The position numbers were made by a program, and so were the translations under genes. Below, in pieces: positions 1,096-62,331 of a stretch of DNA of 64,000 bases. The DNA lies in the IMG/VR virus record IMGVR_UViG_3300045999_010033, positions 62,001 to 126,000 of that record; one strand, written 5' to 3'. The first letter of the stretch is position 1; the number at the start of each line of letters is the position of its first letter. Under the pieces are notes generated by a model. That model was not told the origin of the DNA and did no database searches. It saw nothing but the letters and a program-made list of their open reading frames with translations.

Positions 1096-2211
1096 TTAAT
1101 TTGAAAGGGGAAGTTTAATTGCCGGATGTGATTGGTAATTTAATATCTTAATATCGTTTGGTTTATAACACTCCCAATTATCTTTCTTGCAAAGGTAATC
1201 AGGTAATTTATCCAATTTAGGCAAATCATACGGCGTTCTTGTCAATTGCTCTTTCAATCCATCTATGTGATTGAGATAGATGTGACAATCTCCCAAATTA
1301 CCAATCACTTCTTCGGGAATCATATTGACTTCTTTGGCGATAATTTCTAATAGAAGTGCGTAGGATGCGATGTTGAATGGGAGCCCCAATCCCACGTCCA
1401 CTGACCTCTGTGACCAAATTAAAGAGATTGCTCTGGTTGGTATATTATGTTCTGATAATTGTTTTTCTGTGTAATAGAACCTGTAATCTTGAGGTAGCTT
1501 ATCTTTATCAATTACTCCTAAATGCTTATCCATCAACTTCACTCTCTCTGTCTCGTCTAACTCTCTCGTATAAAATTGAAACGAGTAGTGACACGGTGGC
1601 AAGACCATCTGGTCGAGTTCTCCAACATTCCAAGCACTCACAAGTATCCTCCTACTATCAGGGTCTGTCTTCAGTAGGTGAATCGCGTTTGCGATTTGGT
1701 CTGTATATTCGCCCGAACCATTATAATAATCTGCCCAGCTTCTCCATTGGTTACCGTAGATTGGTCCTAATTCTCCCCACATCTTTGCAAACTCATCATC
1801 GGTTTTGATTTTGTTGATGAATTGTTCTTTTGTAAAATGGACATAATTAGGATACCCACTATTAAACTCTAATCCATCAACTTTAAAGTGTTTCTCTCTA
1901 TCATAGAAGGTAATTGATGATATTTGAGTATTTTTATACCGTTTATAAGCATCCCCATCCCAAATATGGCATCCATTATCCACAAGATACTTAATGTTTG
2001 TGGAGCCGCGTAAGAACCACAGAAGTTCGGTCACCATTGTTTTCCATGCCATCTTCTTTGTAGTGAGAAGTGGAAATCCATCCTTCATAGAATGACGTAT
2101 GGTTCTACCAAATACTGATTTAGTTCCAGTACCGGTACGATCTCCTTTAGTGTATCCGTTTTGTAATATGTCTTTGACTAGATCTAAGTATTGTTGCTCT
2201 ATGTTACTCAT
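1096..2211 (-). CDS. thyA: thymidylate synthase with two large insertions
   Basis: DRTGTGT, ELLWFL, LPPCH, QRSVDVGLGLPFNIASY (Asn = dUMP-specific), DCHIY. Confidence 0.97.
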   Translation of the reverse strand: MSNIEQQYLDLVKDILQNGYTKGDRTGTGTKSVFGRTIRHSMKDGFPLLTTKKMAWKTMVTELLWFLRGSTNIKYLVDNGCHIWDGDAYKRYKNTQISSITFYDREKHFKVDGLEFNSGYPNYVHFTKEQFINKIKTDDEFAKMWGELGPIYGNQWRSWADYYNGSGEYTDQIANAIHLLKTDPDSRRILVSAWNVGELDQMVLPPCHYSFQFYTRELDETERVKLMDKHLGVIDKDKLPQDYRFYYTEKQLSEHNIPTRAISLIWSQRSVDVGLGLPFNIASYALLLEIIAKEVNMIPEEVIGNLGDCHIYLNHIDGLKEQLTRTPYDLPKLDKLPDYLCKKDNWECYKPNDIKILNYQSHPAIKLPLSN

Positions 2212-25245: not shown

Positions 25246-25256
25246 ATATAAATATA
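25246..25256 (-). promoter_or_regulatory. putative phage late-promoter motif inside the glycan island
   Basis: TATATTTATAT. Confidence 0.5.
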
Positions 25257-25258
25257 TA

Positions 25259-28741: not shown

Positions 28742-28804
28742 TATTTTTAACTTTACAATTAATTGTTTTTGATAGTTAACTCTTCTTGCAATCCTTTCGT
28801 AATT

Positions 28805-30233: not shown

Positions 30234-30239
30234 TAAAAC

Positions 30240-30722: not shown

Positions 30723-30724
30723 TT

Positions 30725-36841: not shown

Positions 36842-36851
36842 ATTGTTTATT

Positions 36852-37136
36852 TTAATTTTCAAGTCGTTTCTTCTCCCTTTCTAATCGAGTGGTTTCACTC
36901 ATTGGTCTAGCGAACAATTTAAATATCATACCTTTATCCGAAAATGATACGCTAGAATTGGATGTAGGTTCAATTCTTAAAATCAATTCGCCGGCATCTT
37001 CATCAGTATCAGACCATGCAAAAACCACCGGCTCGTTATCAAAAAATTGAAAACACCATTCTGCTTGCTGAAATTGTTCAGTTTGTTGTACTTGTTGTTC
37101 TTCTATTGGAAAAAGTTCTAATTGTGTAGATTCCAT
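36852..37136 (-). CDS. hypothetical protein with N-terminal QLELF motif
   Basis: MESTQLELFP; start moved to avoid overlap with the clamp gene. Confidence 0.6.
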   Translation of the reverse strand: MESTQLELFPIEEQQVQQTEQFQQAEWCFQFFDNEPVVFAWSDTDEDAGELILRIEPTSNSSVSFSDKGMIFKLFARPMSETTRLEREKKRLEN

Positions 37137-40465: not shown

Positions 40466-42106
40466 TTAAATTAAGTTTTGGTTTGTATAAACAATTGTTG
40501 CGTTCATCCAACCATTTGGTATAAACAAGTCTGCTTTGTGAATTACTTGTATTTTTTCAATTTCATTTAAATTCAATTTACCACTTTTTAAAATACTTTC
40601 CAATTTTTTTGCAAGATTATCACTATTTCCACCATGAACCCAAGTTATAGTTTTAAACTTATGTGGCATAATAATTCTTGCACACAATTCGGTAAGGTGT
40701 TCATCATCCATTTGATTGGATTGCCATTCTTGTAAATGTTTATCGGAAAATGTTAAATCCAATTTGAATAGATACGTGCTATCATCATTTTGAGTTATCT
40801 TATACGAATCAAGATTATTATCGTTTAATAGTTTGTGTGTGTTTAGTATAGTAACCGCGTGTGATACGTGTGATGTATCTTTTAGAATGTTTTTATAATT
40901 TTCAATTTCCGCATCTTCATTCTTTTTGAGTCTAACATTGGATGTATCGGCTAATAAATTATGAAATTTGGCAATCTTTTTAACCAAATCTCTTAACGCG
41001 ATTGGAAACGTCGTATTTCTAAATTTAACTTTTAATCTAGCAAAAGGTATCATCGATTCTGGAGTTAAAACAAATATCCATTTTCTGTTATTATATTCCG
41101 CCGGCCATTGACTAGAATTCGGCCACAAATAAATGGTTGCAATATAAGTACCATCGGGTGATACTACATCTACTGTTGGTTTATCTAACTCTGACAAGTG
41201 TAATGGATGAATGTTTTGTTGCCCATTTGACATTCTATATAGAGTTTGTAATTTGTCAGTTTGAGATTTTCTAATAGTTTCATATGTGAATAAGTTTCCC
41301 ATATATTTTTCACCATCTAAATCAATTATATGCAACATATCACCATCATCAGCCGAGACCTGCTTCATATCAATATAATGCCTTATCAAATTTCCACAAT
41401 TTGATGGAAAATAATAATGTGAAAGTTTATTACTTTGTACAATTTCATCATTTTCAATCAGTTCATATTTCAATTGTTTCCCTATTCTATATTGATATCT
41501 AACTCTAGAAAACTCAATTAGCCCATAATAATCTATTTTAAATGGTAATCCTTTAAATAATTTAGATTTACTATACCAACCATTATAACTTTTCCCTAAC
41601 CCATGCTTTTCAATAAATTCATCAAATTCAACTTCATAAACATCCACAATTATTTTAACCAACGATTTTGTAAATTGTGTGGGTGTTAATGCCTCAATTG
41701 GATCTGTTGTTTCATAATTATATTTAGCAATACGATACTTGTTATCCGGAGTGACGTAGCCTATTTCTTCAAAATAGGAAAAATTATGTGGTGCGATTGA
41801 ACCACCTAATTGCGCCTGACCTACTGATTCACTTGTATTTCTTTTAATTTTACCTAAAGTTTTACCTATAAACTTTGTTTTGAAATCCTCATCGCTGCAC
41901 CTACTACTATTATTTGCTCGTAGTATATAGTAATCACCATCTTTATTTTTTACAATTTGGTTAATAACCATATTACCACCATAGCCTATGGAATTATCAT
42001 CCCATTCACTTAAAAAATTTTGACCGTTTATACCATGCTCATTTGGTTGATTTGCGATAAGAAAAGTTAAATCTTTTGAAAAGGTTTCAGAATACAATTT
42101 TTGCAT
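40466..42106 (-). CDS. putative degenerate GHKL/MORC-like domain + NucS/DUF91-like PD-(D/E)XK nuclease
   Basis: FLSEWDDNSI and VGQAQLGG resemble Bergerat motifs; D...EWQ....DDEHL..L...ITWV resembles ExQ-type restriction-fold nucleases. Confidence 0.5.
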   Translation of the reverse strand: MQKLYSETFSKDLTFLIANQPNEHGINGQNFLSEWDDNSIGYGGNMVINQIVKNKDGDYYILRANNSSRCSDEDFKTKFIGKTLGKIKRNTSESVGQAQLGGSIAPHNFSYFEEIGYVTPDNKYRIAKYNYETTDPIEALTPTQFTKSLVKIIVDVYEVEFDEFIEKHGLGKSYNGWYSKSKLFKGLPFKIDYYGLIEFSRVRYQYRIGKQLKYELIENDEIVQSNKLSHYYFPSNCGNLIRHYIDMKQVSADDGDMLHIIDLDGEKYMGNLFTYETIRKSQTDKLQTLYRMSNGQQNIHPLHLSELDKPTVDVVSPDGTYIATIYLWPNSSQWPAEYNNRKWIFVLTPESMIPFARLKVKFRNTTFPIALRDLVKKIAKFHNLLADTSNVRLKKNEDAEIENYKNILKDTSHVSHAVTILNTHKLLNDNNLDSYKITQNDDSTYLFKLDLTFSDKHLQEWQSNQMDDEHLTELCARIIMPHKFKTITWVHGGNSDNLAKKLESILKSGKLNLNEIEKIQVIHKADLFIPNGWMNATIVYTNQNLI

Positions 42107-42169: not shown

Positions 42170-43009
42170 TTAGAACTTGTAAAGTCCCCCAATATTCCAA
42201 AATAATATAGTACCCTCCAAAGTATCAATGTTTTCTTCTAACCATTTCCATTGCTTAATATCCCAAAATTGATTACATGGAAATGGTGCGGAGTACCCAT
42301 TTAGTCTATTTTCAAAAGGATATTCGGATTTTCGAACATTTATGGGTATGTGTATTCCACTTTTTTTAAGTGTTTTATTAATTGAATGAACCGATGATAC
42401 ACACGTTGACCAAACCTTCTTATTAGTTTTTGGAAAAAAATCTTTTAGTTCTTCTCTATAAAATCCCCTCACTAATCCCGATAGTGTTACGCCACTACCA
42501 CTTGAAACTACTAAATTATCAAAATGTGAAAATGGTAATATCCTATCTGCTAAATAATCCTTATAGTAATCGTGATCAAATGCGTATGGTAACATTTGCC
42601 ATTCGTTTTTATTGGCATCCCTTTTTAAGGAATTATACATTACCTGCATCATGTTTGGTTTAATAGGATTTAAGTGCGTTTTAGGATATGAATTTTTAAT
42701 AAAATCAATATACTCTTTTGATATTTTTTTAGAATCAGGATATGATGCATAAAATTCAATATCCAATTCCTCACATATTGCCGCCAATACCCACGCCGTC
42801 CAACTGCCATCTACTGAAAGATGTGTCAGTGGTCTATCTTTCTTTATATATTTTTTAACCAATTCATACACCGCGGCAGTTTTGCCCCAAGGTGGTAAAA
42901 TTGTACCATCTCCCATTAAATCATCTCTTTTTACCCAAACATCTCTTCCTTTTACTTTATACAATTCCAAAGGTGTGTTCTCATTAAGACCGTTTAATTT
43001 TATGTCCAT
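42170..43009 (-). CDS. fold-type II PLP-dependent enzyme (ACC deaminase/D-cysteine desulfhydrase-like)
   Basis: TPL, VWVKRDDL, PPWGK (PLP Lys), VSSGSGVT, YWD-like FWDIK, LFWNIG. Confidence 0.82.
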   Translation of the reverse strand: MDIKLNGLNENTPLELYKVKGRDVWVKRDDLMGDGTILPPWGKTAAVYELVKKYIKKDRPLTHLSVDGSWTAWVLAAICEELDIEFYASYPDSKKISKEYIDFIKNSYPKTHLNPIKPNMMQVMYNSLKRDANKNEWQMLPYAFDHDYYKDYLADRILPFSHFDNLVVSSGSGVTLSGLVRGFYREELKDFFPKTNKKVWSTCVSSVHSINKTLKKSGIHIPINVRKSEYPFENRLNGYSAPFPCNQFWDIKQWKWLEENIDTLEGTILFWNIGGLYKF

Positions 43010-44505
43010 TTGTAGATTCCTTTATCGTTATTAAATAATTCATCACGCATATGTTTGGGTGAGAATCCATATATTTTCTCAAAATTATCCGATATGACAT
43101 ATGTCAAGTTTTTACGATTTTTAAAATTAATTATAGGGTCGTTGATAATAATATCTTCAATATATGTTTTAAAGTTTGTACCTTTTTGAAAGGCCCGCTT
43201 TTCTTGATCTAATATTTCGTCAGGTAGTTTTCCTCTAAACGCGTTTGCCAGAGGTAATTTCCATTGATTTCCTACCGAAAGAAATTCATTTGGTAAGTTT
43301 GTAGTATAATTTAAAAAATCTACATCAAAAAATGGACAACGCAATTCAATTGTACCGTAATTCATAAAGATTGTATTTCCTCTCAATAAGTTACCGTAGT
43401 ATTGTTTTTCAAACAACTTTTTTCGAATATCACTCCAATCGGGTTTTTTGCTAAACATTCTGAACATACCATATGATCCGTACGCCTCATCTGAGCCTTC
43501 ACCACTAAACGCAACTTTGATGCCATCCTTTGCCATTTGTTCGGCAATAAATGATTGTAAAACTCCCACTTCCATCTGAACCGTTGATGGGTATTCAATA
43601 ACTTTTATAGATTCAAGAAACCTTTGCTTTATTATAGCATCATCTTTCGGTACAAAAACTTCAACAAGTTCTATCCCCAAATATTTGGCACAAACTCTTG
43701 CTTTTTGCAAATCTTTTGATGATTGGTCAAACGCAATCGTATATGCTTTAAGATTTGGTATCCGCTTAGATAATAGGTAAGTAATTACTGCAGAATCGAT
43801 TCCACCACTCAGAGAAGTTGCAATCGGGACATCCGATAATAATCTCTTATCTACTGCAGTTTCCAATAACTTAAATGTTGTTTCCGAAACGTCTTCGTGT
43901 GATGTTGCTTCGGTTGGTGTTTCTGAAAAAGAAAAATAGTAATCACTGCATACTTTTAATTTATTTGTATCAAGATTAATTTCTACAAGAGAATTTTTTG
44001 GTACAAATTTAATTTCAGAACTTCTATATTTTGTTGCGATTGCCTTTATTTCACTTGCAATTATATATTCGTTTTTGTTCAGGATATATAATGGTAGTTT
44101 CCCAACCCAATCTCTAGATAAAATCAATTTATTTTTATCGTAAATAACAAAAGAAAACATACCAGTTAACCTGCGTAGTTCGTTTTCTTTATATAAAAAC
44201 AATATTATTTCCGAATCTGAATTTGATTTAAACGTATATCCTCTCTTTTCATATTCTAATCTGAGTTCCGGATAATTCCATATTTCTCCATTTACTATTA
44301 ACCAAGTATTTTCATATTGCATTGGTTGGTTACCCGATTCGGATATATCATTTATAGACAATCGATTGTGTCCTAATATTATTTTTTTATCTTTGTATGT
44401 AAATTCTTGAATACCTCTATTATCTTTGCCACGATGCTCAATCTCGTTAAGCATTGTGTTTACATCATCTTTACTACAACCAATTGTTGCAACAATTCCA
44501 CACAT
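43000..44505 (-). CDS. asnB: asparagine synthetase B-like glutamine amidotransferase/ATP-dependent amide ligase
   Basis: MCGI, HRG, HNRLSI, GNQPM, NGEIWN, SDSE, SLSGGIDS, SGEGSDE, ELRCPF. Confidence 0.92.
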   Translation of the reverse strand: MCGIVATIGCSKDDVNTMLNEIEHRGKDNRGIQEFTYKDKKIILGHNRLSINDISESGNQPMQYENTWLIVNGEIWNYPELRLEYEKRGYTFKSNSDSEIILFLYKENELRRLTGMFSFVIYDKNKLILSRDWVGKLPLYILNKNEYIIASEIKAIATKYRSSEIKFVPKNSLVEINLDTNKLKVCSDYYFSFSETPTEATSHEDVSETTFKLLETAVDKRLLSDVPIATSLSGGIDSAVITYLLSKRIPNLKAYTIAFDQSSKDLQKARVCAKYLGIELVEVFVPKDDAIIKQRFLESIKVIEYPSTVQMEVGVLQSFIAEQMAKDGIKVAFSGEGSDEAYGSYGMFRMFSKKPDWSDIRKKLFEKQYYGNLLRGNTIFMNYGTIELRCPFFDVDFLNYTTNLPNEFLSVGNQWKLPLANAFRGKLPDEILDQEKRAFQKGTNFKTYIEDIIINDPIINFKNRKNLTYVISDNFEKIYGFSPKHMRDELFNNDKGIYKWT

Positions 44506-44506
44506 A

Positions 44507-45205
44507 TTATTTATTTAATATTTTTAGTAACTCTATGGTTTTTTTCTTTTCGTCGTTCATAGTTCCTATGTGGCAGGAACATGCCAATACTGATACTTTT
44601 TCTAAAGTCAATCCACTTTCTCTAGCTAAGAATTTTCCCATACTTACTAATGCAGAATAATCTGCGTATCCACTTTTAGATACTCGGTTTGAACGTAATA
44701 TTGATGTCAAATATAACTTTCCATTTCTTGGTTTAAGATCAATTGCAATCATACATGGTTGTGAATATTGATTTTTTGCATCACGAAGTGGTTCGTAAAT
44801 GATTAATTCACACCTTTTTACTGCCTTGCCAGTTTTTAATATTTTGATTACATTTTCTACTTGATTAAAAGCACCATTCCAAGATACCATTCTTCCCCAA
44901 TAGCTATCGTACCATTTATCTTTTATAAAAGAATATTCAAGTCCTTCTTCTTCACTGAAGAACTGATTATCGGATTTTTTCATTTGTGGTTCTACAAATG
45001 TTACTGATGAGGCAAAATCAATTCTATCATCTCCCATTATTTGCCTGAAGTGTGGGTCAAACCAATCATCGTTTTGAAATGTGGTTATCTCTGTCATAAC
45101 ATTTAGCTCTTCGGTCAAATCACCTACTTTAATTCCATTTTCTAAAAGATGCTTGGATACTTTTACCCATGCATCGCCAGGAGAAACTGCTTGAATAACT
45201 GTCAT
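44507..45205 (-). CDS. divergent thymidylate-synthase-fold enzyme, predicted cytosine-directed
   Basis: SYWGR, NQ, PC catalytic Cys, RSNRVSKSGYAD (Asp at TS Asn177 position), SCHIG. Confidence 0.8.
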   Translation of the reverse strand: MTVIQAVSPGDAWVKVSKHLLENGIKVGDLTEELNVMTEITTFQNDDWFDPHFRQIMGDDRIDFASSVTFVEPQMKKSDNQFFSEEEGLEYSFIKDKWYDSYWGRMVSWNGAFNQVENVIKILKTGKAVKRCELIIYEPLRDAKNQYSQPCMIAIDLKPRNGKLYLTSILRSNRVSKSGYADYSALVSMGKFLARESGLTLEKVSVLACSCHIGTMNDEKKKTIELLKILNK

Positions 45206-45210
45206 TTTGT

Positions 45211-46782
45211 TTATGGTTTATAAAATACAAAAATAGGTTCGTATTTGTATGATTGTCCTTCTATTTGCATACTATTTTTTGCTTTAGATAAATCCATACC
45301 TGTCATAGGACTCATTGTCATTTTTATTTTACCCCGATATTCACACCCCAATTCGGTAAGAATGTTAATACTATCTTGTTCAAGTGGATACCATTTATCG
45401 GGTCCTACTTTTATATCTGCAATGTTCCAACAAATATATCTATCATTTCTCAAATATTCAAAAGCGGTAGTTAACGTGGGTTTCAAAAATCCATCTCTCC
45501 AACTTTCATAGTTGTTAAATTTCTTAAATGATTGGGTATCATCATCGGAATATCTTTCTCTATCAAAATATGGTGGAGATGTAAAAACAAAATCCAATTT
45601 GCCTTTATATTTTTGAAATCTTACTTCATTGTGAATTATTTCAGACCCGGTTGTAAAAATATCATAGGTATTCGCGTGACCCCAAAATGAGTTAGCTGCT
45701 CCAGGTACTTTGTTATTAAAAAACTCCGCAAGGTATTCATATCTTGTTTTTCCTATTTCAGGAATCCAATTTTCGGTATTAGGGTCGTTTCCAATATAGT
45801 GGATATTTCTATCATCAATAGAAAGAGCACCCAATATTCTTCCACCCCATCCTGCCGACGGGTCGTAGATGTTAATAACTTTTTGATTTTTTATATGGGT
45901 TGTGAATCTTTGATATAAATATTTTGCAGTAAGTGGTGGAAAGTTTACCACCGCTTGTGTTCCCATTCCAATACGAAATGCGGCAGTGGCTTCAGGAAAT
46001 ATTCTTTGCCCTAATGGATAGATTTTTATTTGAATTGGTTGCTTTGGTAAATCAACCAAATTATCTATATTTTCACCCCAGTCGGCGGTTCTAAGTGATG
46101 AAATATTTTCATATTTTAAGATACCCTCCTTATAAAGTTCTTTTACCTCTTGCGCGGTGATTGGTGCAGATGGCACTTTACTATCTGCTTGTGAAAGGCA
46201 AAACCCATAACCTTCTTTTTTATCCCCATTCGCCCATTTTATTATCCATTCTTTGCCACTTTGAATATGAGAGTTATGGAATTCGGGATTATTAATATGT
46301 AGTGTTTTTGAAAACCTATACATACCATCTTGGCGGGTCAACCTTCTCATTTGTTTAATGAATTCTGGCAAGTAAGTATCATCTGAAAATACATCGTATA
46401 TCGATGGTTTTGGCTTTTCGTAAGTAGAACCACCAATTCCAGTTTTATACATTGCTGGAAAAAATTGATTTACCGGTGTAGCAAATTTATTAAAGTTAAA
46501 AATTACTTCATCGCCATTATCATCTTTTTCTTCAAACTCATTTACTTTGTAAGTTTGTAGTTTTGAAAATTGTTCAATCATTTCTGATTCATCTACCCCA
46601 ATCCGAGGAGGTGCACCGGTTTCATTCCATTTTCTTACTGCCAATTCTCTGAAAAATGCTACCCATTCTTCAAATTGTTTGAATGGCATTTTAAGAACAT
46701 CTTCATAAAGTAAGTTTACTTCAGGTTCGTACAACCAATCATTTTTTTCGTAAAAATATTTTTTTGAATAATTGAAGCCCAT
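45211..46782 (-). CDS. amino-group DNA methyltransferase-like protein (SPPY)
   Basis: NFPP, YDPSAGWGGR (motif I), FTSPPYF..E.YS (motif IV), WNIAD, EPIF. Confidence 0.85.
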   Translation of the reverse strand: MGFNYSKKYFYEKNDWLYEPEVNLLYEDVLKMPFKQFEEWVAFFRELAVRKWNETGAPPRIGVDESEMIEQFSKLQTYKVNEFEEKDDNGDEVIFNFNKFATPVNQFFPAMYKTGIGGSTYEKPKPSIYDVFSDDTYLPEFIKQMRRLTRQDGMYRFSKTLHINNPEFHNSHIQSGKEWIIKWANGDKKEGYGFCLSQADSKVPSAPITAQEVKELYKEGILKYENISSLRTADWGENIDNLVDLPKQPIQIKIYPLGQRIFPEATAAFRIGMGTQAVVNFPPLTAKYLYQRFTTHIKNQKVINIYDPSAGWGGRILGALSIDDRNIHYIGNDPNTENWIPEIGKTRYEYLAEFFNNKVPGAANSFWGHANTYDIFTTGSEIIHNEVRFQKYKGKLDFVFTSPPYFDRERYSDDDTQSFKKFNNYESWRDGFLKPTLTTAFEYLRNDRYICWNIADIKVGPDKWYPLEQDSINILTELGCEYRGKIKMTMSPMTGMDLSKAKNSMQIEGQSYKYEPIFVFYKP

Positions 46783-46798
46783 GTTGATTAATTATAAT

Positions 46799-46830
46799 TA
46801 AATATATGATTTATTATTGTATTTTACAAA
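46799..46830 (-). promoter_or_regulatory. Bacteroidota sigma-type promoter for the MTase-TS-AsnB-PLP operon
   Basis: TTTG-N20-TATATTTA. Confidence 0.65.
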
Positions 46831-48063
46831 TCATTTTTGCCAAATCCATATGGGTTCACCAAAGGCATGATTTTTTGTTTGTTCTGCTTTTTCTTTAAAT
46901 TCATCTGAAAAATAATCAGAAGCGGCTGTGCCTGCTCCACCACTATTTGGTCGTTTTGTCATTTCCATGCCTATACATCCCCTATAAGTAAGCCCTTTTG
47001 ATTCCAAAAAATCATTCATGGGGTTTACGATGGGAACATATCCTTTATCAGGAGATGAATATACATCGGATATGTTTATTGCCAAAATTCCATTTGTTTT
47101 TATTGTTGGTATGATTTTGTCAAGTGTTTTGTGTAAAAAATTTTTATTCCAATCATCAACTGATTTATATCTAACCCAGCTTTGGGTATCATCGTATGAA
47201 TATTTTTCAGTATTGAAATATGGTGGTGAAGTAAAAACTGTATCAAAAAAGTTTTCAAATCTAGAATAGTCTAAGTCTTCCGCAGGAGATTCTATCATTT
47301 CTGCAGTTTTTTCATTTTCAAAAAAAGTTTTATTCTTTTTATAAAATTCAATTTGTTTTTTATAACCTTCGGTGTTTGTCTTATTTGGATCTATTCCAAC
47401 ATAATTCTTTCCATATTCACTTGCAAAAAATCCACAAAGTCTATCTCCCCATCCTGCCGAAAAATCTAATATATTTTCAGATTTAAAGTAATCATAAAAC
47501 GCCTTTGCAATAGCCGGTTTAAATTGAGCAGGTACATACTTTCTCATCTGAATGGCTAATATGATATTTTTTTTATTTACCATATCTAAACTTTGTTCAA
47601 GTGTAAAGAACGCCCGAACAACAGTTCGTATACCTTTTGGTGTTTGCCATGTTTTCCACGGAGAGGGCATTCTAATCCAATCAACTTTGTGTCTGGTTTG
47701 AATATGAAATATATTAGATGCCTTATTACCGGTAATTGTTTTTTTAAAAAACATTGGTTTACCACCGAATGTTAAATCATATGCTGAATTATTTTCGTTT
47801 CTTGGAAACCATTCACCTTCTACAAGGATGTCTGGCCACCATGTCCCTTTTAATTTTCTAAAATCCTCCAATACTTCATCGGCGGTTAGTTCAGGAAATG
47901 GATATGGATATGTAAACAACACTTCTGAAATCTCTTCTACTATTTCTTCTTTTTCCCAAGTTTTTTTTATCCAATCCCATTCTTCCTTTTCAATGGTAAG
48001 ATATGGGTGCATCCCATAAAACTTTTTGAAATAATCTTTTATTGTAACTTTTTGAGAAGACAT
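46831..48063 (-). CDS. amino-group DNA methyltransferase-like protein (SPPY)
   Basis: QFKP, LDFSAGWGDR, FTSPPYF..E.YS, INISD, EPIW. Confidence 0.85.
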   Translation of the reverse strand: MSSQKVTIKDYFKKFYGMHPYLTIEKEEWDWIKKTWEKEEIVEEISEVLFTYPYPFPELTADEVLEDFRKLKGTWWPDILVEGEWFPRNENNSAYDLTFGGKPMFFKKTITGNKASNIFHIQTRHKVDWIRMPSPWKTWQTPKGIRTVVRAFFTLEQSLDMVNKKNIILAIQMRKYVPAQFKPAIAKAFYDYFKSENILDFSAGWGDRLCGFFASEYGKNYVGIDPNKTNTEGYKKQIEFYKKNKTFFENEKTAEMIESPAEDLDYSRFENFFDTVFTSPPYFNTEKYSYDDTQSWVRYKSVDDWNKNFLHKTLDKIIPTIKTNGILAINISDVYSSPDKGYVPIVNPMNDFLESKGLTYRGCIGMEMTKRPNSGGAGTAASDYFSDEFKEKAEQTKNHAFGEPIWIWQK

Positions 48064-48072: not shown

Positions 48073-48273
48073 TTATTTTTGAAAATCAGTAGGCCAAGAT
48101 AGAATATGAGTCCAAGTTTTGTTTGTAACTATTTTTTTAATGTTAGCAGGCGAAACCCTATGATTTCTAGCCAATACTTTTACATTTCTATGTCCAACTC
48201 TCCATAAAGCACGTATATTCTCTACCTCTTTTTCGGTAAGTTTGTGCATGGGATGTAATTCTCCTCTTAACAT
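48073..48273 (-). CDS. small HTH DNA-binding protein
   Basis: GELHPMHKLTE..V..IR ... LARNHRVS..NI..I....TW, like HNH-associated HTH domains; start moved to ATG 48273. Confidence 0.7.
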   Translation of the reverse strand: MLRGELHPMHKLTEKEVENIRALWRVGHRNVKVLARNHRVSPANIKKIVTNKTWTHILSWPTDFQK

Positions 48274-48276
48274 AAC

Positions 48277-48308
48277 CAAATATACAAATAATTTTTGAGA
48301 ATTACAAA
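48277..48308 (-). promoter_or_regulatory. Bacteroidota sigma-type promoter (consensus), probably leaderless transcript
   Basis: TTTG-N20-TATATTTG-GTT-ATG. Confidence 0.75.
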
Positions 48309-49459: not shown

Positions 49460-51322
49460 TTACATAGTTGTAACAACACACGCGCCACCTGCACATGCTG
49501 CTTCCCCATTTAAATCCGTATTATCATCTAATTCAATAATCTGACGTAAATCAATAGAGCTCAATGTTTGCAATAATCTTTCATATTCTTCTTTAGTACA
49601 ATCTTCAAAAGGAGCTTGAATATAGCTACCACCATCATATGGTAAAACTGATAAACCATTGTACGCATCTTTGTTTTCCCACATCCATTCTCCAACTGCT
49701 TTCCATTCATGCTCTCTGATTGATACCGTTGCAGATACATTGTGCGTGTTATTACCAGTTCGATGTCCTGGTTTAATCCATTCATTATGGACGCGTTTTA
49801 CTCTTTCCAATAGTTGAATTGGAGATTCGGTTCTAAATATTGCGGTTTCAGGTGCCTTTTGTGGAATTGAAATTACTGCAGTATCGTGTGGGCGGAAATA
49901 TTCATCTTCAATTAATTCGGGATGGTTCAATAGTAGGTATTGATAAATTGCTTCATTTTTACCCACTCTCACTCTACGAATATAATAATCATTGTGCCAA
50001 GCATGAATACCTGATGATGTTCCTAATGTCAATGATGTAGTTCCTGCAGGTTTAACTGTCGTGGTTCTTGCCGAGTGATTTATTCCTAACAAATCTGCTA
50101 TTCTAGCATTTTCATCTTTTACAACCTTTGCGGCCTCTTTCATATTAAATTTTAAAACAGCTCCGCTGCCAATTCCTGTCATAGATACACCAATAAGCGC
50201 ATCTTTTTCTGTCGTTCTTTGCCAAATTGGACGAAGGTAGTGGAAATCAGTGTAGCCGGCTTGTAGTGTTCCAATAAACGCGGCAGCCTTAACTCGTTCA
50301 TTTAACTCTTCTTGCGTTTGAACATCCGATACATTTACTTCACAAAGGTTACAAAATTGGAAAGGTCTAAGAGCGATTTCACAACAAGGGTTTGTCCCCC
50401 AATCCTTATCGTTACTTAAATAAATACCCGGCTCACCTGCTCCACTTGCTTCAATACGTTTCCACAAATCCATAAAGTATTCCTTTGTGATTTTGTGTCT
50501 CATTAAAACTGCTGAATTGTTTGCACGTCCACGTTGTGAATTTTGTTCCCACCATGCACCACTTTTACAACTAATCATTTCATCATCAGTCGCAGAAAAC
50601 AACGAAATCAATGCGGCTCTACGAATGCCACCTGCCAATACTGCATCTGCAATATGACAAACTATATCATGCACTTCTATGGGTCTGAGTTTATCTCCAT
50701 CATTTTTGGCATCGAGAATGCCTTCTAATTTAATTAAGCATTCTTTTAGTGGTTGAGGGCCGGGGGCTTTACCACCTGAAGTAATTAATCTTGCACCTTT
50801 TGGACGAATATCTCTAAAATCAAATAGAGGTTTACTACCACCGAAAAAGTATGCTTTAACTAATATAGATACTGCATCTGCCCATCCTTCAATGGAATCA
50901 CCGATAAGAAATCTTCTAGTCTTATCCGGATTTGGTTTTCTGATTTCTGGAAGTTGATCTACATGGTGTTTTTGAACTGAGTAACCTACTCCGGTCCCAC
51001 CTAATAGTAAGAACATGATTTCTGAAAATACTCGGTAATCATCAACCGGTGCATACGCACAATTATAAATGCGATTAGGACTTATTTCAATTGGCTTTCC
51101 TGCAAATTGCATAGAACGCATTGATGGTAAAACTTTTTTATCATACACAAATTTATAAGTAGAACGTATTTCAGATTCTAATTGTGGATATTTTTTAATG
51201 TGCATATCCATGTTGCGTGTAACCAATTCTTCCCAAGTTTCTCTGCGGGAAAATTCAGGAATGTATTTGGCGTATTTCATATACACCGTAATATCCGATA
51301 AAATTTGTGTTGAGATATCCAT
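49460..51322 (-). CDS. nrdJ: class II (adenosylcobalamin-dependent) ribonucleotide reductase, monomeric RTPR type
   Basis: YNC, AGGIRRAA, TNPCCEI, FCNL, VKPAGTTS, C-terminal ACAGGAC; no beta subunit nearby. Confidence 0.93.
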   Translation of the reverse strand: MDISTQILSDITVYMKYAKYIPEFSRRETWEELVTRNMDMHIKKYPQLESEIRSTYKFVYDKKVLPSMRSMQFAGKPIEISPNRIYNCAYAPVDDYRVFSEIMFLLLGGTGVGYSVQKHHVDQLPEIRKPNPDKTRRFLIGDSIEGWADAVSILVKAYFFGGSKPLFDFRDIRPKGARLITSGGKAPGPQPLKECLIKLEGILDAKNDGDKLRPIEVHDIVCHIADAVLAGGIRRAALISLFSATDDEMISCKSGAWWEQNSQRGRANNSAVLMRHKITKEYFMDLWKRIEASGAGEPGIYLSNDKDWGTNPCCEIALRPFQFCNLCEVNVSDVQTQEELNERVKAAAFIGTLQAGYTDFHYLRPIWQRTTEKDALIGVSMTGIGSGAVLKFNMKEAAKVVKDENARIADLLGINHSARTTTVKPAGTTSLTLGTSSGIHAWHNDYYIRRVRVGKNEAIYQYLLLNHPELIEDEYFRPHDTAVISIPQKAPETAIFRTESPIQLLERVKRVHNEWIKPGHRTGNNTHNVSATVSIREHEWKAVGEWMWENKDAYNGLSVLPYDGGSYIQAPFEDCTKEEYERLLQTLSSIDLRQIIELDDNTDLNGEAACAGGACVVTTM

Positions 51323-51475: not shown

Positions 51476-52534
51476 TTACACTTTCTTATCAAAAACAAAT
51501 ATGGGCTCCAATTTAATTCCATTACCCGAAACCGATGATAACACCAAATACAAAATATCAGTTTTAATAAATCCCACCGCTTCTGCCATGTTGATTGTTT
51601 CTGCTTCAATACCAACATATTTGGGTGTATTTGCAATATTTATCATCATTTTTCCGGTAGGTTTTAATCCTTTATGACAATTTATCATGGTTTGTTTTAA
51701 GAACCCATTCATCCAATCCCTTTGATTTGGAAATTTTTTATATGACTGTGTATCTTCATCCGAATACTTTTCAGTATCAAAATACGGTGGAGATGTGAAG
51801 CATAAATCTAAACTCTCGGTATCGGGTACAAATTCTTCAGATCCAATTTTATGCAGTAATATCTGCTTATTAAAGAGGTTTAATTCATCTCGTAGTGATA
51901 CTAACCCTTCGTATGTTTTAGTTGAAGGATCAGTTCCTATATAGGTTTTACATCTACTTGTAAGAAATCCTGTCAATCTGCCACCCCATCCACAACTCAT
52001 ATCCCAAACAATCTCACCACCATAGGTATTATATATCCATTTAGCCACCGATGGTCTGAAATTACTGACGGACTGGTTTCCTCCATATATCTTAAAATTT
52101 TGCCTCAATCGATTTAAGGTAAATTTTCCATTACCATGTTTCAATTGCCAAGTCCAAGTTTTTTTAATTATTTCTTTTAATTTATCATCATTGTTCCAAT
52201 ATTCAATCGGTTTCATTTTACTTGAACCACATATAACATCAACCCAATGTGGAAAATAAGACCAAGCAAGAGATAGACAGTGCATGGTTTGCTGTAATTG
52301 ATTCCCCTTACAAATAGTAGATTCATCAAACGAAATCAAAGATTTTAGTTGATTCAGTTTTTCATGCTTTGGTACATTGTAGTGTGGAAATCCTCTACGC
52401 CTATGATATCTAAATATCACATCTTCTGCGTAATCCCTATCGGTTATAGAAAATATATCCGATATGATTCGGTGATATTCCAATTCCAATTCATCAACAT
52501 CCACAAATTTTGAAAAAGCAGTGTAGTTTATCAT
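51476..52534 (-). CDS. amino-group DNA methyltransferase-like protein (SPPY)
   Basis: NFRP, WDMSCGWGGR, FTSPPYF..EKYS, INIAN, EPIF. Confidence 0.85.
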   Translation of the reverse strand: MINYTAFSKFVDVDELELEYHRIISDIFSITDRDYAEDVIFRYHRRRGFPHYNVPKHEKLNQLKSLISFDESTICKGNQLQQTMHCLSLAWSYFPHWVDVICGSSKMKPIEYWNNDDKLKEIIKKTWTWQLKHGNGKFTLNRLRQNFKIYGGNQSVSNFRPSVAKWIYNTYGGEIVWDMSCGWGGRLTGFLTSRCKTYIGTDPSTKTYEGLVSLRDELNLFNKQILLHKIGSEEFVPDTESLDLCFTSPPYFDTEKYSDEDTQSYKKFPNQRDWMNGFLKQTMINCHKGLKPTGKMMINIANTPKYVGIEAETINMAEAVGFIKTDILYLVLSSVSGNGIKLEPIFVFDKKV

Positions 52535-62328: not shown

Positions 62329-62331
62329 AAC

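What the first reader, a model, noticed from the sequence alone, without database searches (positions are those of the whole stretch)
42170..48063. Candidate new DNA base hypermodification pathway: SPPY MTase-like pair + TS-fold enzyme + AsnB + PLP enzyme
Seen: MTase-like (410 aa), then a promoter and a tightly coupled run of MTase-like (523 aa), TS-fold, AsnB-like and fold-type II PLP enzyme, placed between nucleotide-metabolism genes and PolB. A separate canonical ThyA exists, so the TS paralog is free for another job. Established: TS paralogs start pyrimidine modification in T-even phages, PLP enzymes tailor hypermodified thymidine in ViI/M6-type phages, and AsnB-family enzymes amidate carboxylates. 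Inference: these genes build an amino-acid-derived or amide-bearing base, probably on cytosine. The hmdU kinase, amino acid:DNA transferase and Que/Dpd genes of described pathways are not visible in this window.
Basis: partly seen in the sequence, partly recalled or inferred. Interest (0 to 1): 0.92.

Follow-up and report, generated by a model that had tools for sequence, protein, structure and literature searches.

The report
New phage cytosine-hypermodification gene module
A freshwater jumbo phage carries a conserved gene set (an odd thymidylate-synthase-like enzyme, an amide-forming enzyme and a vitamin-B6 enzyme, all related to enzymes that decorate phage DNA) that most likely builds a still unknown modified cytosine to protect its DNA.

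Summary
The five genes are at the stated coordinates on the minus strand of a complete 221-kb freshwater phage genome. The homology points to DNA modification, not amino-acid metabolism.

- **PLP enzyme:** a full-length homolog of Pseudomonas phage M6 gp52, a decarboxylase proven to act on amino acids tethered to DNA bases.
- **"AsnB":** a full-length homolog of A0A7T0Q3R0, the untested glutaminase-bearing branch of CmoY. CmoY is the amide ligase that acts on 5-carboxymethylcytosine in DNA. This protein lacks the aspartate-loop arginine of true AsnB.
- **TS-like protein:** defines a small subfamily of short TS homologs. It keeps the catalytic Cys and the phosphate-binding residues. It has the cytosine-type Asp and has lost the folate-binding Asp (Arg or Ala instead). 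Its nearest solved fold is a phage dCMP 5-hydroxylase.

The TS-like gene sits next to a CmoY-type ligase in every context with enough flanking sequence. An SPPY MTase-like gene usually accompanies them, plus either the PLP enzyme or a B12-type radical-SAM enzyme. This holds in several unrelated phage lineages and in an Ignavibacteria element. No known handle-installing enzyme is present: no CmoA/CmoX, 5-hmdU kinase, aGPT-Pplase or TET.

Verdict: a real, undescribed variant of phage pyrimidine hypermodification, probably on cytosine C5. The product is unknown and the MTase role is unproven.

The parts
44507..45205 (-). TS-like enzyme, 232 aa. It is a short TS homolog with catalytic Cys151, phosphate binders K130-R131 and R171, cytosine-type Asp182, and Arg174 in place of the folate-binding Asp. 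It is the likely first step, acting on dCMP.
   Evidence: PF00303 below cut-off; TIGR03283 E 3e-19. (AF2 model, pLDDT 94). (Foldseek hits: dCMP 5-hydroxylase AfhB, MilA, methanogen TS). (residue table). (hhalign E 2e-20 to RB69 gp48 against 4e-8 to the window's own ThyA).
43000..44505 (-). CmoY-type amidotransferase ('AsnB-like'), 501 aa. The glutaminase domain has Cys2 and the PP-loop reads SLSGGIDS. It is the likely ATP-dependent amidation step for a carboxylate on the modified base, using glutamine-derived ammonia.
   Evidence: (E 6e-61, full length, to Streptomyces phage TurkishDelight gp124). (gp124 = UniRef100_A0A7T0Q3R0, named in PMC12783734). (SpCmoY hits residues about 228-473 of close orthologs, E 4e-9). 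(AsnB T322/T323/R325 replaced by V/Q/E, as in gp124).
42170..43009 (-). PLP-dependent enzyme of the M6 gp52 / ViI gp226 family, 279 aa. Lys43 is the predicted Schiff-base lysine and S169-G-S-G-V-T is the glycine loop. It is the likely decarboxylase (or other PLP step) on an alpha-amino-acid side chain of the base.
   Evidence: phrog_7093, E 4e-23. (25% identity over the full length to M6 gp52, E 4e-23). (gp52 shown to decarboxylate C-alpha-GlyT in DNA). (Lys43 invariant, including in gp52). (profile hit to fold-type II PLP enzyme 1j0a, with the Lys and glycine loop aligned).
45211..46782 (-). MTase-like protein, 523 aa. The C-terminal Rossmann domain has motif I (PSAGWGGR) before motif IV (TSPPYF). 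It has a 290-aa N-terminal domain of unknown function. It lies immediately upstream of the TS-like gene.
   Evidence: Orthologous type sits next to the TS-like gene in L051 and L077.
46831..48063 (-). MTase-like protein, 410 aa, paralog of the 523-aa protein with the same motifs.
   Evidence: Orthologous type lies directly upstream of the TS-like gene in L067-69 and nearby in L073, and in L002-L011.
51476..52534 (-). Third MTase-like paralog, 352 aa, next to the DnaB-like helicase. It is a possible member of the set.
   Evidence: Orthologous type lies directly upstream of the TS-like gene in L066 and of the ligase in L050. It also occurs alone in Vibrio phage 2.058.O.
46816..46843 (-). Sigma-70-like promoter match (TTGGCA-16-TACAAT) ahead of the 523-aa gene.
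   Evidence: This is a consensus match only, in AT-rich DNA.
48073..48279 (-). Small conserved ORF, 68 aa, with a helix-turn-helix-like C-terminus. In most relatives it lies directly upstream of the module. Its role is unknown.
1096..2211 (-). Canonical ThyA, 371 aa. It is context only: it shows the TS-like gene is not needed for dTMP synthesis.
   Evidence: (314 bits).

Best explanation
The TS-like, AsnB-like and PLP genes form the core of a pathway that makes a hypermodified cytosine for the phage's own DNA. The MTase-like genes probably belong to the same pathway.

**Step 1 (fold and residues shown; substrate and product inferred).** The short TS homolog binds dCMP, attacks C6 with Cys151 and puts a new substituent on C5. 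It has lost the folate-binding Asp (Arg174 instead). So the substituent is probably not a plain methyl or hydroxymethyl from methylene-tetrahydrofolate. It is either (a) a hydroxyl, as in its nearest solved relatives, onto which a SAM-derived carboxyl- or amino-acid-bearing group is later transferred by an MTase-like enzyme, or (b) a carboxylate- or amino-acid-bearing side chain installed directly.

**Step 2 (inferred).** The modified dCMP is phosphorylated and incorporated by the phage PolB.

**Step 3 (homology shown; substrate inferred).** The CmoY-type enzyme adenylates a side-chain carboxylate and converts it to an amide with ammonia from its own glutaminase domain. In six relatives a glutaminase-less CmoY-type ligase replaces it.

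**Step 4 (homology shown; reaction inferred).** The gp52-type PLP enzyme forms a Schiff base with a free alpha-amine of the side chain and decarboxylates it. Alternatively it uses typical fold-type II chemistry to make that amino-acid part.

**MTase-like proteins.** They either N-methylate (N4 of C, N6 of A, or a side-chain amine) or install the SAM-derived group of option (a).

**Purpose (from established knowledge of phage hypermodification).** Protection of virion DNA from host nucleases.
For: **PLP enzyme.** It is a full-length homolog of M6 gp52: 279 against 278 aa, E 4e-23, with the shared C-terminal motif SAPFPCN..K.WKWL..FWNIG. The Schiff-base Lys is invariant. gp52 and ViI gp226 were shown in vitro to decarboxylate DNA-tethered amino acids (PMC8989533). 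A family profile hits fold-type II enzyme 1j0a with the Lys and glycine loop aligned.

**AsnB-like enzyme.** It scores 198 bits against TurkishDelight gp124, compared with 137 bits against E. coli AsnB. gp124 sits between a CmoX-like C5-MTase and a CmoA-like gene. It is the named representative A0A7T0Q3R0 of the glutaminase-bearing CmoY cluster. SpCmoY, proven to ligate glycine to 5cxmC in DNA, matches both the synthetase domain and the 308-aa substitute F21. AsnB Arg325 is replaced by Glu in both this protein and gp124.

**TS-like enzyme.**
- The AF2 model has pLDDT 94.
- The best PDB folds are the phage HY126 dCMP hydroxylase and MilA.
- Profile comparison gives E 2e-20 over the full length to RB69 5hodCMP synthase.
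- Cys151, K130-R131 and R171 are kept.
- The residue equivalent to N177 is Asp in all 14 subfamily members, and the D169 equivalent is Arg or Ala.
- A canonical ThyA is present elsewhere in the genome.

**Co-occurrence.**
- In the window's own clade the ligase is present in 41 of 42 loci and PLP in 37 of 37.
- The same four families occur in other gene orders in L066 and L067-69, where the TS-like protein is 41-44% identical.
- TS-like + CmoY-type + B12-type radical SAM + MTase occurs in L050 (a TS::rSAM fusion), L051, L054, L073 and L077.
- TS-like + AsnB-like occurs in L055 and L076.

**Conservation and absences.** The TS-like (73-83% identity) and AsnB-like (72-83%) proteins are more conserved than PolB (52-63%). 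No other known handle-installing enzyme is in the complete genome.
Against: - No chemistry is shown and no modified nucleoside is known for any phage of this group. No cultured relative carries the TS-like subfamily.
- A ligase and a decarboxylase would compete for a single carboxylate, so the side chain needs two carboxylates or the PLP step is not a decarboxylation. No scheme I could write uses every enzyme without an unprecedented step.
- The diagnostic D169N of 5hodCMP synthases is not met (Arg), and neither is L143D/E (Ser).
- No dCTPase/MazG, dCMP deaminase or recognisable extra dNMP kinase was found in this genome, so full replacement of C is not supported.
- The AsnB-like protein passes NCBI's asparagine-synthase equivalog cut-off (295 against 267 bits).
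- The MTase-like family is large and mostly found outside such modules.
- The complex prediction gave no answer.
- The DNA is readily assembled from many short-read metagenomes. This does not exclude modification but gives no hint of it.
Confidence: 0.6

Rival explanations
1. Glycosylated 5-hydroxy- or 5-hydroxymethyl-cytosine pathway. The TS-like enzyme makes the hydroxyl handle, the conserved glycosyltransferases 9-12 kb downstream attach sugars to DNA, and the AsnB-like and PLP enzymes tailor the sugar. One example would be amidation of a uronic acid, as WbpS-type AsnB homologs do in O-antigen synthesis (own knowledge).
For: - The nearest solved fold and profile match are 5hodCMP synthases, whose phages glycosylate 5hoC.
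- The window holds GT4 x2, GT2, GT10 and a sugar-nucleotide tailoring cluster at 16.5-33.4 kb.
- The 460-aa GT4 is conserved at 52-64% identity in 5 of 5 complete relatives at a similar distance from the module.
- One of its Pfam hits is 'GT4 in conflict systems'.
Against: - The four-gene module recurs in L066 and L067-69 with no glycosyltransferase among the called genes within 8 kb.
- The AsnB-like protein is closest to a CmoA/CmoX-linked ligase, not to sugar amidotransferases.
- The PLP enzyme's studied relatives act on base-tethered amino acids.
- The D169N signature is absent.
- The sugar cluster has lower G+C (26-32%) and could serve virion or host-surface glycans.
Confidence: 0.13
2. 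The enzymes act only on the nucleotide pool or on a small molecule, such as a nucleoside-antibiotic-like inhibitor, a signal, or a decoy nucleotide. The product is never put into DNA.
For: - TS-fold enzymes act on mononucleotides, and the phosphate binders are kept.
- MilA, a close structural match, starts a peptidyl-nucleoside antibiotic pathway.
- The TS::radical-SAM fusion P0127 suggests the partner shares a small-molecule substrate.
- B12-type radical SAM, ATP-grasp and PLP enzymes are typical of such pathways.
Against: - The two best-characterised relatives of the downstream enzymes (CmoY and gp52) act on DNA.
- The module always lies among replication genes, next to DNA MTase-like and ParB-like genes.
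- No exporter or self-resistance gene is evident.
Confidence: 0.1
3. There is no common pathway. The genes are independent auxiliary genes: a second thymidylate synthase, a genuine asparagine synthetase, an ACC-deaminase/D-cysteine-desulfhydrase-like enzyme, and ordinary orphan DNA methyltransferases.
For: - The AsnB-like protein passes TIGR01536.
- The PLP enzyme's only NCBIfam hits are to the D-Cys desulfhydrase family.
- Methanogen-type 'putative TS' proteins are the nearest Swiss-Prot folds.
- The MTase-like family occurs alone in other phages.
Against: - Synteny and translational coupling are kept across lineages with 35-50% identity and shuffled gene order.
- The AsnB aspartate-loop Arg is lost.
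- The PLP enzyme scores E 4e-23 against gp52 but only about 5e-4 against desulfhydrases.
- The TS-like enzyme lacks the dUMP-type Asn and the folate Asp, and a real ThyA is present.
Confidence: 0.05
4. The target is not cytosine C5 in phage DNA but an exocyclic amine (N4-C or N6-A) or an RNA. The SPPY or Dam-type MTase-like enzyme transfers a carboxymethyl or 3-amino-3-carboxypropyl group from a SAM-type donor. The ligase and PLP enzyme tailor that group, in a Mom-like or diphthamide-like logic. The TS-like enzyme has an accessory role.
For: - An amino-MTase is present in nearly every version of the module, and a Dam-class one appears in L054.
- A 3-amino-3-carboxypropyl group would provide both the carboxylate and the free amine that the ligase and PLP enzymes need.
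- PP-loop amidation following SAM-dependent steps is known from diphthamide synthesis (own knowledge).
Against: - TS-like + ligase is the constant pair.
- The MTase family is widespread without the module.
- No CmoA is present.
- Yang et al. found no N4/N6 carboxymethyltransferases linked to CmoA.
- The SPPY motif and motif I look like those of ordinary methyltransferases.
Confidence: 0.1

Closest known systems
CmoA-CmoX-CmoY system of Synechococcus phage S-B43 (5-carboxymethylcytosine and its glycine amide; Yang et al., Nat Commun 2025, PMC12783734), with its untested glutaminase-bearing branch (A0A7T0Q3R0 = Streptomyces phage TurkishDelight gp124)
   Same: The AsnB-like protein is a full-length homolog of A0A7T0Q3R0 (E 6e-61). 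Its synthetase domain, and the F21 substitute, match SpCmoY. The logic is the same: an ATP-dependent amide ligase works on a carboxylate handle on cytosine. ParB-like and MTase genes are frequent neighbours in both systems.
   Different: The complete genome and the related loci have no CmoA and no C5-MTase-type CmoX. A TS-fold enzyme and SPPY-type MTase-like proteins stand in their place. A PLP enzyme or a B12-type radical SAM enzyme is added. If the TS-like enzyme installs the handle, installation would be pre-replicative.
Thymidine hypermodification of Pseudomonas phage M6 and Salmonella phage ViI (5-NedU, 5-NeOmdU; Lee et al., PMC5889632, PMC8989533)
   Same: The PLP enzyme is a gp52/gp226 homolog with the same length, Lys and C-terminal motif. 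A TS homolog starts the pathway. The cluster lies in the replication module.
   Different: There are no homologs of M6 gp54 (5-hmdU DNA kinase), gp51 (aGPT-Pplase2 amino acid:DNA transferase) or the SPL-like radical SAM isomerase gp53. The TS-like enzyme carries the cytosine-type Asp, not the dUMP-type Asn. A CmoY-type ligase is present, which those pathways lack.
Flavin-dependent 5-hydroxy-dCMP synthases (RB69 gp48, DLP3 gp80, HY126 AfhB; PMC13326640; PDB 9iqc/9iqu)
   Same: It is a short TS homolog of about 230 aa. It gives the best Foldseek PDB hits and hhalign E 2e-20 over the full length. The catalytic Cys and N177D are present. One distant relative (L066) has an FMN-binding PNPOx-like gene in the module.
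   Different: The diagnostic D169N is replaced by Arg or Ala, and L143E by Ser. Identity is about 20%. The neighbouring genes are a ligase and a PLP enzyme, not arabinose-nucleotide genes.
T4 gp42 dCMP hydroxymethylase and MilA CMP hydroxymethylase
   Same: TS fold, catalytic Cys and cytosine-type Asp. MilA is the best PDB sequence hit (E 1e-3).
   Different: The folate-binding Asp169 equivalent is lost. The acidic residue at the L143 position is absent. The protein is about 90 residues shorter than MilA (232 against 325 aa), and T4 gp42 was not compared.
Methanogen-type 'putative thymidylate synthase' (TIGR03283)
   Same: It is the best NCBIfam hit (E 3e-19) and the best Swiss-Prot fold match (TM 0.68-0.73). 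The size is similar.
   Different: The score of 70 bits is far below the 175-bit cut-off. Most of the more distant short TS homologs in alignment A2, which include methanogen-type fusions to MtrA and pterin-binding domains, keep Asp169 and the dUMP-type Asn. The phage subfamily does not.

Membership tests
Thymidylate synthase ThyA (PF00303) | Score above Pfam gathering threshold | tested here: not met
   23.7 bits and 22.6 bits against a cut-off of 24.3. The window's real ThyA scores 314 bits.
Thymidylate synthase ThyA (PF00303) | Catalytic Cys146 and 5'-phosphate-binding Arg residues (R126/R127, R166) | tested here: met
   Cys151 is invariant. K130-R131 and R171 align with ThyA R126-R127 and R166.
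Thymidylate synthase ThyA (PF00303) | Asn177 (dUMP specificity) and Asp169 (folate binding) | tested here: not met
   Asp182 and Arg174 stand at these positions. In all 14 subfamily members the residues are Asp and Arg/Ala.
5-hydroxy-dCMP synthase (RB69 gp48 type) | N177D together with the diagnostic D169N (PMC13326640) | tested here: not met
   N177D is present, but position 169 is Arg or Ala, never Asn. L143 is Ser, not Glu.
5-hydroxy-dCMP synthase (RB69 gp48 type) | Flavin cofactor and O2-dependent hydroxylation | not testable with these tools
   Only indirect hints are available: the best fold match is AfhB, and a PNPOx-like FMN-binding gene sits in the L066 module.
CmoY DNA amide ligase family (incl. 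glutaminase-bearing cluster A0A7T0Q3R0) | Sequence homology to characterised SpCmoY and to A0A7T0Q3R0; PP-loop SGGxDS | tested here: met
   E 6e-61 over the full length to gp124 = A0A7T0Q3R0. SpCmoY matches residues about 228-473 of F5 orthologs at 4e-9 to 4e-8 and F21 at 1e-9 to 2e-11. The PP-loop SLSGGIDS is present.
CmoY DNA amide ligase family (incl. glutaminase-bearing cluster A0A7T0Q3R0) | Genomic association with CmoA (Cx-SAM synthase) and CmoX (SPPC C5-carboxymethyltransferase) | tested here: not met
   No CmoA (TIGR00740) and no PF00145 in the complete genome. phmmer found no homolog in 45 related loci or in the distant loci tested up to that call (L050-L056).
CmoY DNA amide ligase family (incl. 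glutaminase-bearing cluster A0A7T0Q3R0) | Acts on a carboxylate of a modified base in DNA | not testable with these tools
   Needs an enzyme assay.
Asparagine synthetase B | Curated HMM cut-offs | tested here: inconclusive
   It passes TIGR01536 (295 against 267 bits), but only profile positions 1-381 of 517 align. It fails PRK09431 (260 against 499).
Asparagine synthetase B | Aspartate-activating loop Thr322-Thr323-x-Arg325 (E. coli numbering; role from own knowledge of Boehlein et al.) | tested here: not met
   The loop aligns to Val-Gln-Met-Glu. TurkishDelight gp124 has the same Gln-x-Glu.
M6 gp52 / ViI gp226 PLP-dependent DNA decarboxylases (phrog_7093) | Full-length homology, Schiff-base Lys, glycine-rich phosphate loop | tested here: met
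   E 4e-23 and 279 against 278 aa. phrog_7093 at E 4e-23. Lys43 is invariant and aligned to gp52 K36. The loop SSGSGVT aligns to that of 1j0a.
M6 gp52 / ViI gp226 PLP-dependent DNA decarboxylases (phrog_7093) | Works downstream of 5-hmdU DNA kinase and aGPT-Pplase amino acid:DNA transferase | tested here: not met
   No homologs of M6 gp51, gp53 or gp54 in the genome.
M6 gp52 / ViI gp226 PLP-dependent DNA decarboxylases (phrog_7093) | Decarboxylates a base-tethered alpha-amino acid | not testable with these tools
   Needs an assay. A structure prediction for this protein could not be run.
N4-cytosine / N6-adenine DNA methyltransferases (PF01555, beta class) | Pfam threshold and motif order IV ... 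I | tested here: not met
   Scores of 22.8 and 23.7 bits against a cut-off of 26.7 for the 523- and 352-aa paralogs; the 410-aa paralog had no PF01555 hit. Motif I (SAGWGGR) lies before motif IV (TSPPYF), i.e. gamma-like order.
N4-cytosine / N6-adenine DNA methyltransferases (PF01555, beta class) | (S/D/N)PP(Y/F) catalytic motif and SAM-binding glycine motif | tested here: met
   TSPPYF and xSxGWGxR are invariant in the three paralogs. PADLOC type II MTase hits are weak. Atlas neighbours are 76% PF01555.

The most novel reading that the evidence does not exclude
The short TS homolog is a new kind of TS-fold enzyme. It uses neither folate (as ThyA or gp42 do) nor flavin/O2 in the AfhB manner. 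Instead it joins C5 of dCMP to an amino-acid-derived, carboxylate-bearing fragment. That reactive fragment would be supplied by the fold-type II PLP enzyme, for example as an aminoacrylate-type intermediate. In other lineages it would be supplied by the B12-type radical SAM enzyme that is sometimes fused to the TS domain. The CmoY-type enzyme then amidates the side chain and the SPPY enzymes N-methylate it. The result would be a diphthamide-like amino-amide side chain on cytosine. This would be a third, independent way of giving DNA a chemical handle, beside hydroxyl/hydroxymethyl and Cx-SAM carboxymethyl. It appears to be widespread in freshwater and marine jumbo phages.
Probability: 0.2. Interest if true: 0.92.

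Novelty: new variant of a known kind. Interest (0 to 1): 0.8.

Why it matters
Phage DNA hypermodifications defeat restriction enzymes and CRISPR nucleases, and they supply enzymes for DNA labelling and sequencing chemistry. All characterised pyrimidine pathways start from one of three handles:
- hydroxymethyl (T4, M6, ViI);
- hydroxyl (RB69);
- Cx-SAM-derived carboxymethyl (S-B43).

This module combines downstream enzymes of two of those pathways, the CmoY ligase and the gp52 decarboxylase. It pairs them with a TS-fold enzyme whose cofactor site is altered, and it has none of the known handle installers. It therefore most likely encodes a base not yet seen.

It also offers a soluble-protein alternative for the glutaminase-bearing CmoY branch, which its discoverers could not test. 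The genes are abundant: 208 near relatives of the TS-like protein were found in lake and ocean metagenomes. This phage occurs in at least 20 lake or freshwater runs. The modification would therefore matter for how aquatic jumbo phages evade defence, and for biases in metagenomic sequencing.

Tried and rejected
- **DNA similarity to cultured phages:** none. No cultured phage has the TS-like subfamily, so no experimental anchor exists.
- **Sequence-only PDB searches:** uninformative for the single PLP sequence and for both MTase-like proteins.
- **The search for homologous proteins on the TS-like protein:** the listed hits were all close relatives at 68-100% identity. The exhaustive representative search was what opened the distant contexts.
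- **Complex prediction, TS-like dimer + 410-aa MTase-like:** 'no answer', not evidence either way.
- **Structure prediction of the PLP enzyme:** The first time was because a GenBank-derived row was in the alignment. I did not resend the barred sequence. A profile search of PDB sequences was used instead.
- **Sequencing runs:** all holders are kept as assembled contigs, so base-modification signals cannot be read.
- **Hypothesis: AsnB is a true asparagine synthetase.** Rejected on the substrate loop and on closer kinship to gp124.
- **Hypothesis: the PLP enzyme is an ACC deaminase or D-Cys desulfhydrase.** Rejected on the much stronger match to gp52.
- **Hypothesis: hidden CmoA, CmoX, TET, 5-hmdU kinase or aGPT-Pplase elsewhere in the genome.** Not found.
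- **Hypothesis: the radical SAM partner in distant modules is an M6 gp53-type isomerase.** Rejected. No similarity was found, and it resembles B12-binding class B enzymes.
- **Hypothesis: the window's own B12-radical SAM enzyme (23538-22009) is that partner.** Only marginal similarity.
- **Literature searches for this gene combination:** nothing found.

Full report
**1. What is there**

The window is bases 62001-126000 of a 221,095-bp IMG/VR virus record judged complete. It has about 32% G+C and almost all genes are on the minus strand. The five ORFs of the finding are exactly as described. They are flanked upstream by class II RNR, PhoH and a thioredoxin, and downstream by a 546-aa protein without matches and a T4-type PolB. 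Further upstream lie gp32-like, UvsX/RecA-like, 5'-3' exonuclease and DnaB-like genes, plus a third MTase-like paralog of 352 aa. Gene spacing is 5 nt, 1 nt and a 10-nt overlap, and a promoter-like match sits before the 523-aa gene. A canonical ThyA (314 bits) lies at 1096-2211 and no ThyX was found. The nearest cultured phage by PolB is Microcystis phage Mel-JY01 at 49% identity. It did not appear among the tblastn hits for the TS-like, AsnB-like or PLP proteins. The phage itself is present in at least 20 lake or freshwater metagenome runs.

**2. The PLP enzyme**

Pfam and NCBIfam see it only faintly (PALP; D-Cys desulfhydrase family, E about 5e-4). PHROG 7093 matches over the whole length (E 4e-23). 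tblastn finds the 'threonine dehydratase' of Pseudomonas phage M6 and its relatives. BLASTP against M6 gp52 gives 25% identity over 279/278 residues, E 4e-23, with a shared C-terminal motif. Lee et al. showed that gp52 and its ViI homolog gp226 are PLP-dependent decarboxylases. They act on amino acids already attached to thymine in DNA (C-alpha-GlyT to 5-NedU; O-SerT to 5-NeOmdU), and K36 is the proposed Schiff-base lysine (PMC8989533). In an alignment of 18 family members including gp52, the equivalent Lys43 is invariant. A family profile aligns this Lys and the glycine loop to the fold-type II enzyme 1j0a, the same template those authors reported. Its family is the DNA-hypermodification decarboxylases, not ACC deaminases.

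**3. The AsnB-like enzyme**

It has an intact class II glutaminase domain (Cys2 and the usual motifs) and a PP-loop. It passes the general asparagine-synthase model, but only over the first 355 residues. Its best match among phage records is Streptomyces phage TurkishDelight gp124 (E 6e-61 over the full length, 198 bits, against 137 bits for E. coli AsnB). gp124 lies between a C5-cytosine MTase homologous to CmoX (E 6e-65) and a CmoA homolog. It is UniRef100_A0A7T0Q3R0. That is the protein Yang et al. named as representative of the second-largest CmoY cluster. Members of that cluster carry a glutamine-hydrolysing domain and are predicted to amidate 5-carboxymethylcytosine with ammonia. They could not be tested because the protein was insoluble (PMC12783734). 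SpCmoY itself was shown in vivo and in vitro to ligate glycine to 5cxmC in DNA. It matches the synthetase domain of close orthologs of the window's protein (E 4e-9 to 4e-8). In the loop where E. coli AsnB has Thr322-Thr323-x-Arg325, this protein and gp124 both have x-Gln-x-Glu. It is therefore best read as a CmoY-type DNA-base amidotransferase, not an asparagine synthetase.

**4. The TS-like enzyme**

It scores just under the Pfam TS threshold. It is closest to the methanogen-type TS model, though far below that cut-off. An exhaustive search of 1.8 billion representatives found only 13 clusters at E <= 1e-30, so the family is small. The AlphaFold model is confident (pLDDT 94). Foldseek ranks the phage HY126 flavin-dependent dCMP 5-hydroxylase (9iqc/9iqu) and the CMP hydroxymethylase MilA first, ahead of ThyA. 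A profile of the family aligns over its whole length to RB69 gp48, a proven 5-hydroxy-dCMP synthase (E 2e-20). It aligns only over its C-terminal half to the window's own ThyA (E 4e-8).

I used the diagnostic positions set out by Lee et al. 2026 (PMC13326640):
- Catalytic Cys146 is Cys151.
- Phosphate binders R126/R127 and R166 are K130-R131 and R171.
- N177 is Asp182, the cytosine-type residue.
- L143 is Ser148.
- D169 is Arg174.

In all 14 members of the close subfamility (33-76% identity) position 177 is Asp and position 169 is Arg or Ala. Most of the more distant short TS homologs keep Asp169 and Asn177, and 5hodCMP synthases have Asn169. The enzyme therefore probably binds a cytosine mononucleotide and does chemistry at C5. 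It fits none of the three known specificities (methyl, hydroxymethyl, hydroxyl) by their signatures.

**5. Gene neighbourhoods**

In 45 related viral contigs (TS-like 73-83% identical) the order is TS-like, ligase, PLP. The ligase is present in 41 of 42 loci with room and PLP in 37 of 37. In six loci the 501-aa AsnB-like gene is replaced, at the same place, by a 308-aa PP-loop protein (F21). F21 is itself a CmoY homolog (E 1e-9 to 2e-11 against SpCmoY; 1e-13 to 5e-17 against the CmoY-like protein of Staphylococcus phage vB-SscS-F1, which sits between CmoA and CmoX homologs). TS-like and AsnB-like proteins are more conserved than PolB.

Distant members of the TS-like subfamily show the same partners in other orders and in unrelated genomes:

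| Locus | Gene order |
|---|---|
| L066 | MTase-like, TS-like, CmoY-like, PLP (E 2e-81 to the window's), then an FMN-binding PNPOx-like gene |
| L067-69 | MTase-like, TS-like, PLP, CmoY-like |
| L051 and L077 (Ignavibacteria MAG) | ParB-like, MTase-like, TS-like, F21-type ligase, B12-type radical SAM; L051 also has an integrase about 3.7 kb upstream |
| L050 | MTase-like, F21-type ligase, ATP-grasp, TS::radical-SAM fusion |
| L054 | F21-type ligase, TS-like, Dam-class MTase, radical SAM |
| L073 | MTase-like, (IS605 insertion), TS-like, AsnB-like (E 2e-170), radical SAM |
| L055, L076 | TS-like, AsnB-like |
| L056, L062, L065 (short contigs) | TS-like, radical SAM |

The constant pair is TS-like plus a CmoY-type ligase. 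A PLP enzyme or a B12-type radical SAM enzyme is the alternative third partner. An amino-MTase is nearly always present. Only one cellular genome among 185,579 species representatives matched the subfamily.

**6. What is absent**

phmmer with M6 gp49-gp59, with TurkishDelight gp117-125 and with S-B43/vB-SscS-F1 CmoA/X/Y found only the PLP and ligase homologs in this genome. Family searches found no C5-MTase, CmoA, TET/JBP, MazG or dCMP deaminase. A dUTPase is present at 36416-36862.

**7. The MTase-like proteins**

The three paralogs share about 28% identity. They have invariant motifs xSxGWGxR (motif I) followed by FTSPPYF..E.YS..DTQS (motif IV) and EPI near the C-terminus. This is the gamma-like order, with different N-terminal domains. 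Their Atlas neighbours are a large viral family labelled N6_N4_Mtase or N4-cytosine methylase. Each of the three types is the one adjacent to the TS-like gene in some lineage, which argues for linkage. On the other hand, a 39%-identical copy of the 352-aa type stands in Vibrio phage 2.058.O beside dCMP deaminase, DHFR and ThyA, with no TS-like, ligase or PLP gene. In L054 a Dam-class enzyme takes the place. I therefore count them as probable but unproven members. They could be ordinary methylases adapted to the modified DNA. They could also be the enzymes that transfer a larger SAM-derived group.

**8. Mechanism**

- **Shown:** the folds, motifs, homologies and co-occurrence above.
- **Inferred:** the TS-like enzyme modifies dCMP at C5. 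The nucleotide is incorporated. The CmoY-type enzyme amidates a side-chain carboxylate with glutamine-derived ammonia. The gp52-type enzyme handles an alpha-amino-acid part.
- **Open problem:** a single carboxylate cannot be both amidated and removed. Three resolutions are possible. The side chain may carry two carboxylates. The two enzymes may act on different fractions of sites. Or the PLP enzyme here may do beta-replacement- or elimination-type chemistry that creates the amino-acid fragment, with the radical SAM enzyme as the alternative supplier. The fusion of TS and radical SAM domains would fit that last reading.

I could not discriminate between these. The three contending sub-models are all inferences:
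1. A hydroxyl handle plus a SAM-derived group.
2. Direct carboxyalkylation by the TS-like enzyme.
3. Glycosylation through the conserved GT4 cluster.

**9. Novelty**

Each enzyme family is known and two were characterised only in 2021-2026. Searches of the held literature found no description of this combination. It fails the defining context of each known system: no CmoA/CmoX, no kinase/aGPT-Pplase, no D169N. I therefore file it as a new variant of phage pyrimidine hypermodification with an unknown product.

Noticed in passing
window 16527-33417 (minus strand): A large, low-G+C (26-32%) sugar-tailoring and glycosyltransferase cluster. It holds a PfkB kinase, a PNP_UDP_1 phosphorylase-like gene, a DegT aminotransferase, a split TPP enzyme, a B12-binding radical SAM enzyme (509 aa), an NDP-sugar epimerase/dehydratase, a methyltransferase, GT10, a GFO/IDH/MocA oxidoreductase, an FAD oxidoreductase, GT2 and two GT4 genes. 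The 460-aa GT4 is conserved at 52-64% identity in 5 of 5 complete relatives. It could glycosylate DNA, virions or host surface.
   Followed up: partly
window 40466-42106 (minus strand); L005, L010, L011, L016, L043, L044: The slot between the PLP gene and PolB is variable. In the window it holds a 546-aa protein with no Pfam, PHROG, NCBIfam or PADLOC match. In some relatives that protein is absent. In L010, L011 and L044 a DUF262+HNH nuclease lies near the same place, after the PLP gene or further downstream; it matches PADLOC NsnA/PD-T4-2_A and is GmrSD-like. A GroEL homolog lies nearby in L005, L016, L043 and L044.
   Followed up: partly
L050:7088-9118 (protein P0127): A natural fusion of the TS-like domain with a B12-type radical SAM domain (676 aa). 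It sits next to an ATP-grasp gene, an F21-type ligase and an MTase-like gene in a PolA-type phage contig.
   Followed up: partly
L051 and L077 (MAG of uncultured Ignavibacteria, CAIOZA010000025.1): The five-gene version (ParB-like, MTase-like, TS-like, F21 ligase, radical SAM) is 54-77% identical between two contigs. In L051 it lies beside a tyrosine integrase and next to RelA/SpoT and MiaB-like host genes. It is thus an integrated element in a bacterial genome.
   Followed up: partly
L028, L034, L038-L041 (about 7350-7780 in L028); L022-L026 (about 11050-11570): In some relatives a 140-aa MazG-like NTP pyrophosphohydrolase sits two genes upstream of the TS-like gene. In others a dUTPase follows the PLP gene. 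The window genome has a dUTPase (36416-36862) but no MazG.
   Followed up: partly
window 1096-2211 (minus strand): The canonical ThyA is unusually long at 371 aa. It matches the TS models in two or three pieces, with an insertion of roughly 40-60 residues after the catalytic-Cys region.
   Followed up: no
L067:1044-4259 and L068, L069: Three to four tandem genes with ADP-ribosyltransferase (PF03496) hits lie a few kb upstream of the module in one distant phage lineage.
   Followed up: no
L073:6766-7944 and 13937-16580: An IS605-type TnpB gene is inserted between the MTase-like/PDDEXK genes and the TS-like gene. A RecA-like gene nearby appears split by inteins.
   Followed up: no
window 49460-51322; relatives L002 etc.: The window's RNR matches class II signatures. 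Many close relatives also carry a class I beta-subunit-like gene (F7, about 337 aa), read as such from its sequence motifs alone, beside the large subunit. The window genome lacks that gene.
   Followed up: no
L005:6766-7938, L010, L011: A 390-aa protein is inserted between the MTase-like and TS-like genes in three relatives. By eye it has an ABC-type ATPase N-terminus and a GNAT-like C-terminus. It was not scanned against any library.
   Followed up: no
window 61087-62334 (minus strand): A 415-aa protein with no Pfam hit gives a weak PADLOC match to a DRT-type reverse-transcriptase/PolA model (E 4e-5).
   Followed up: no
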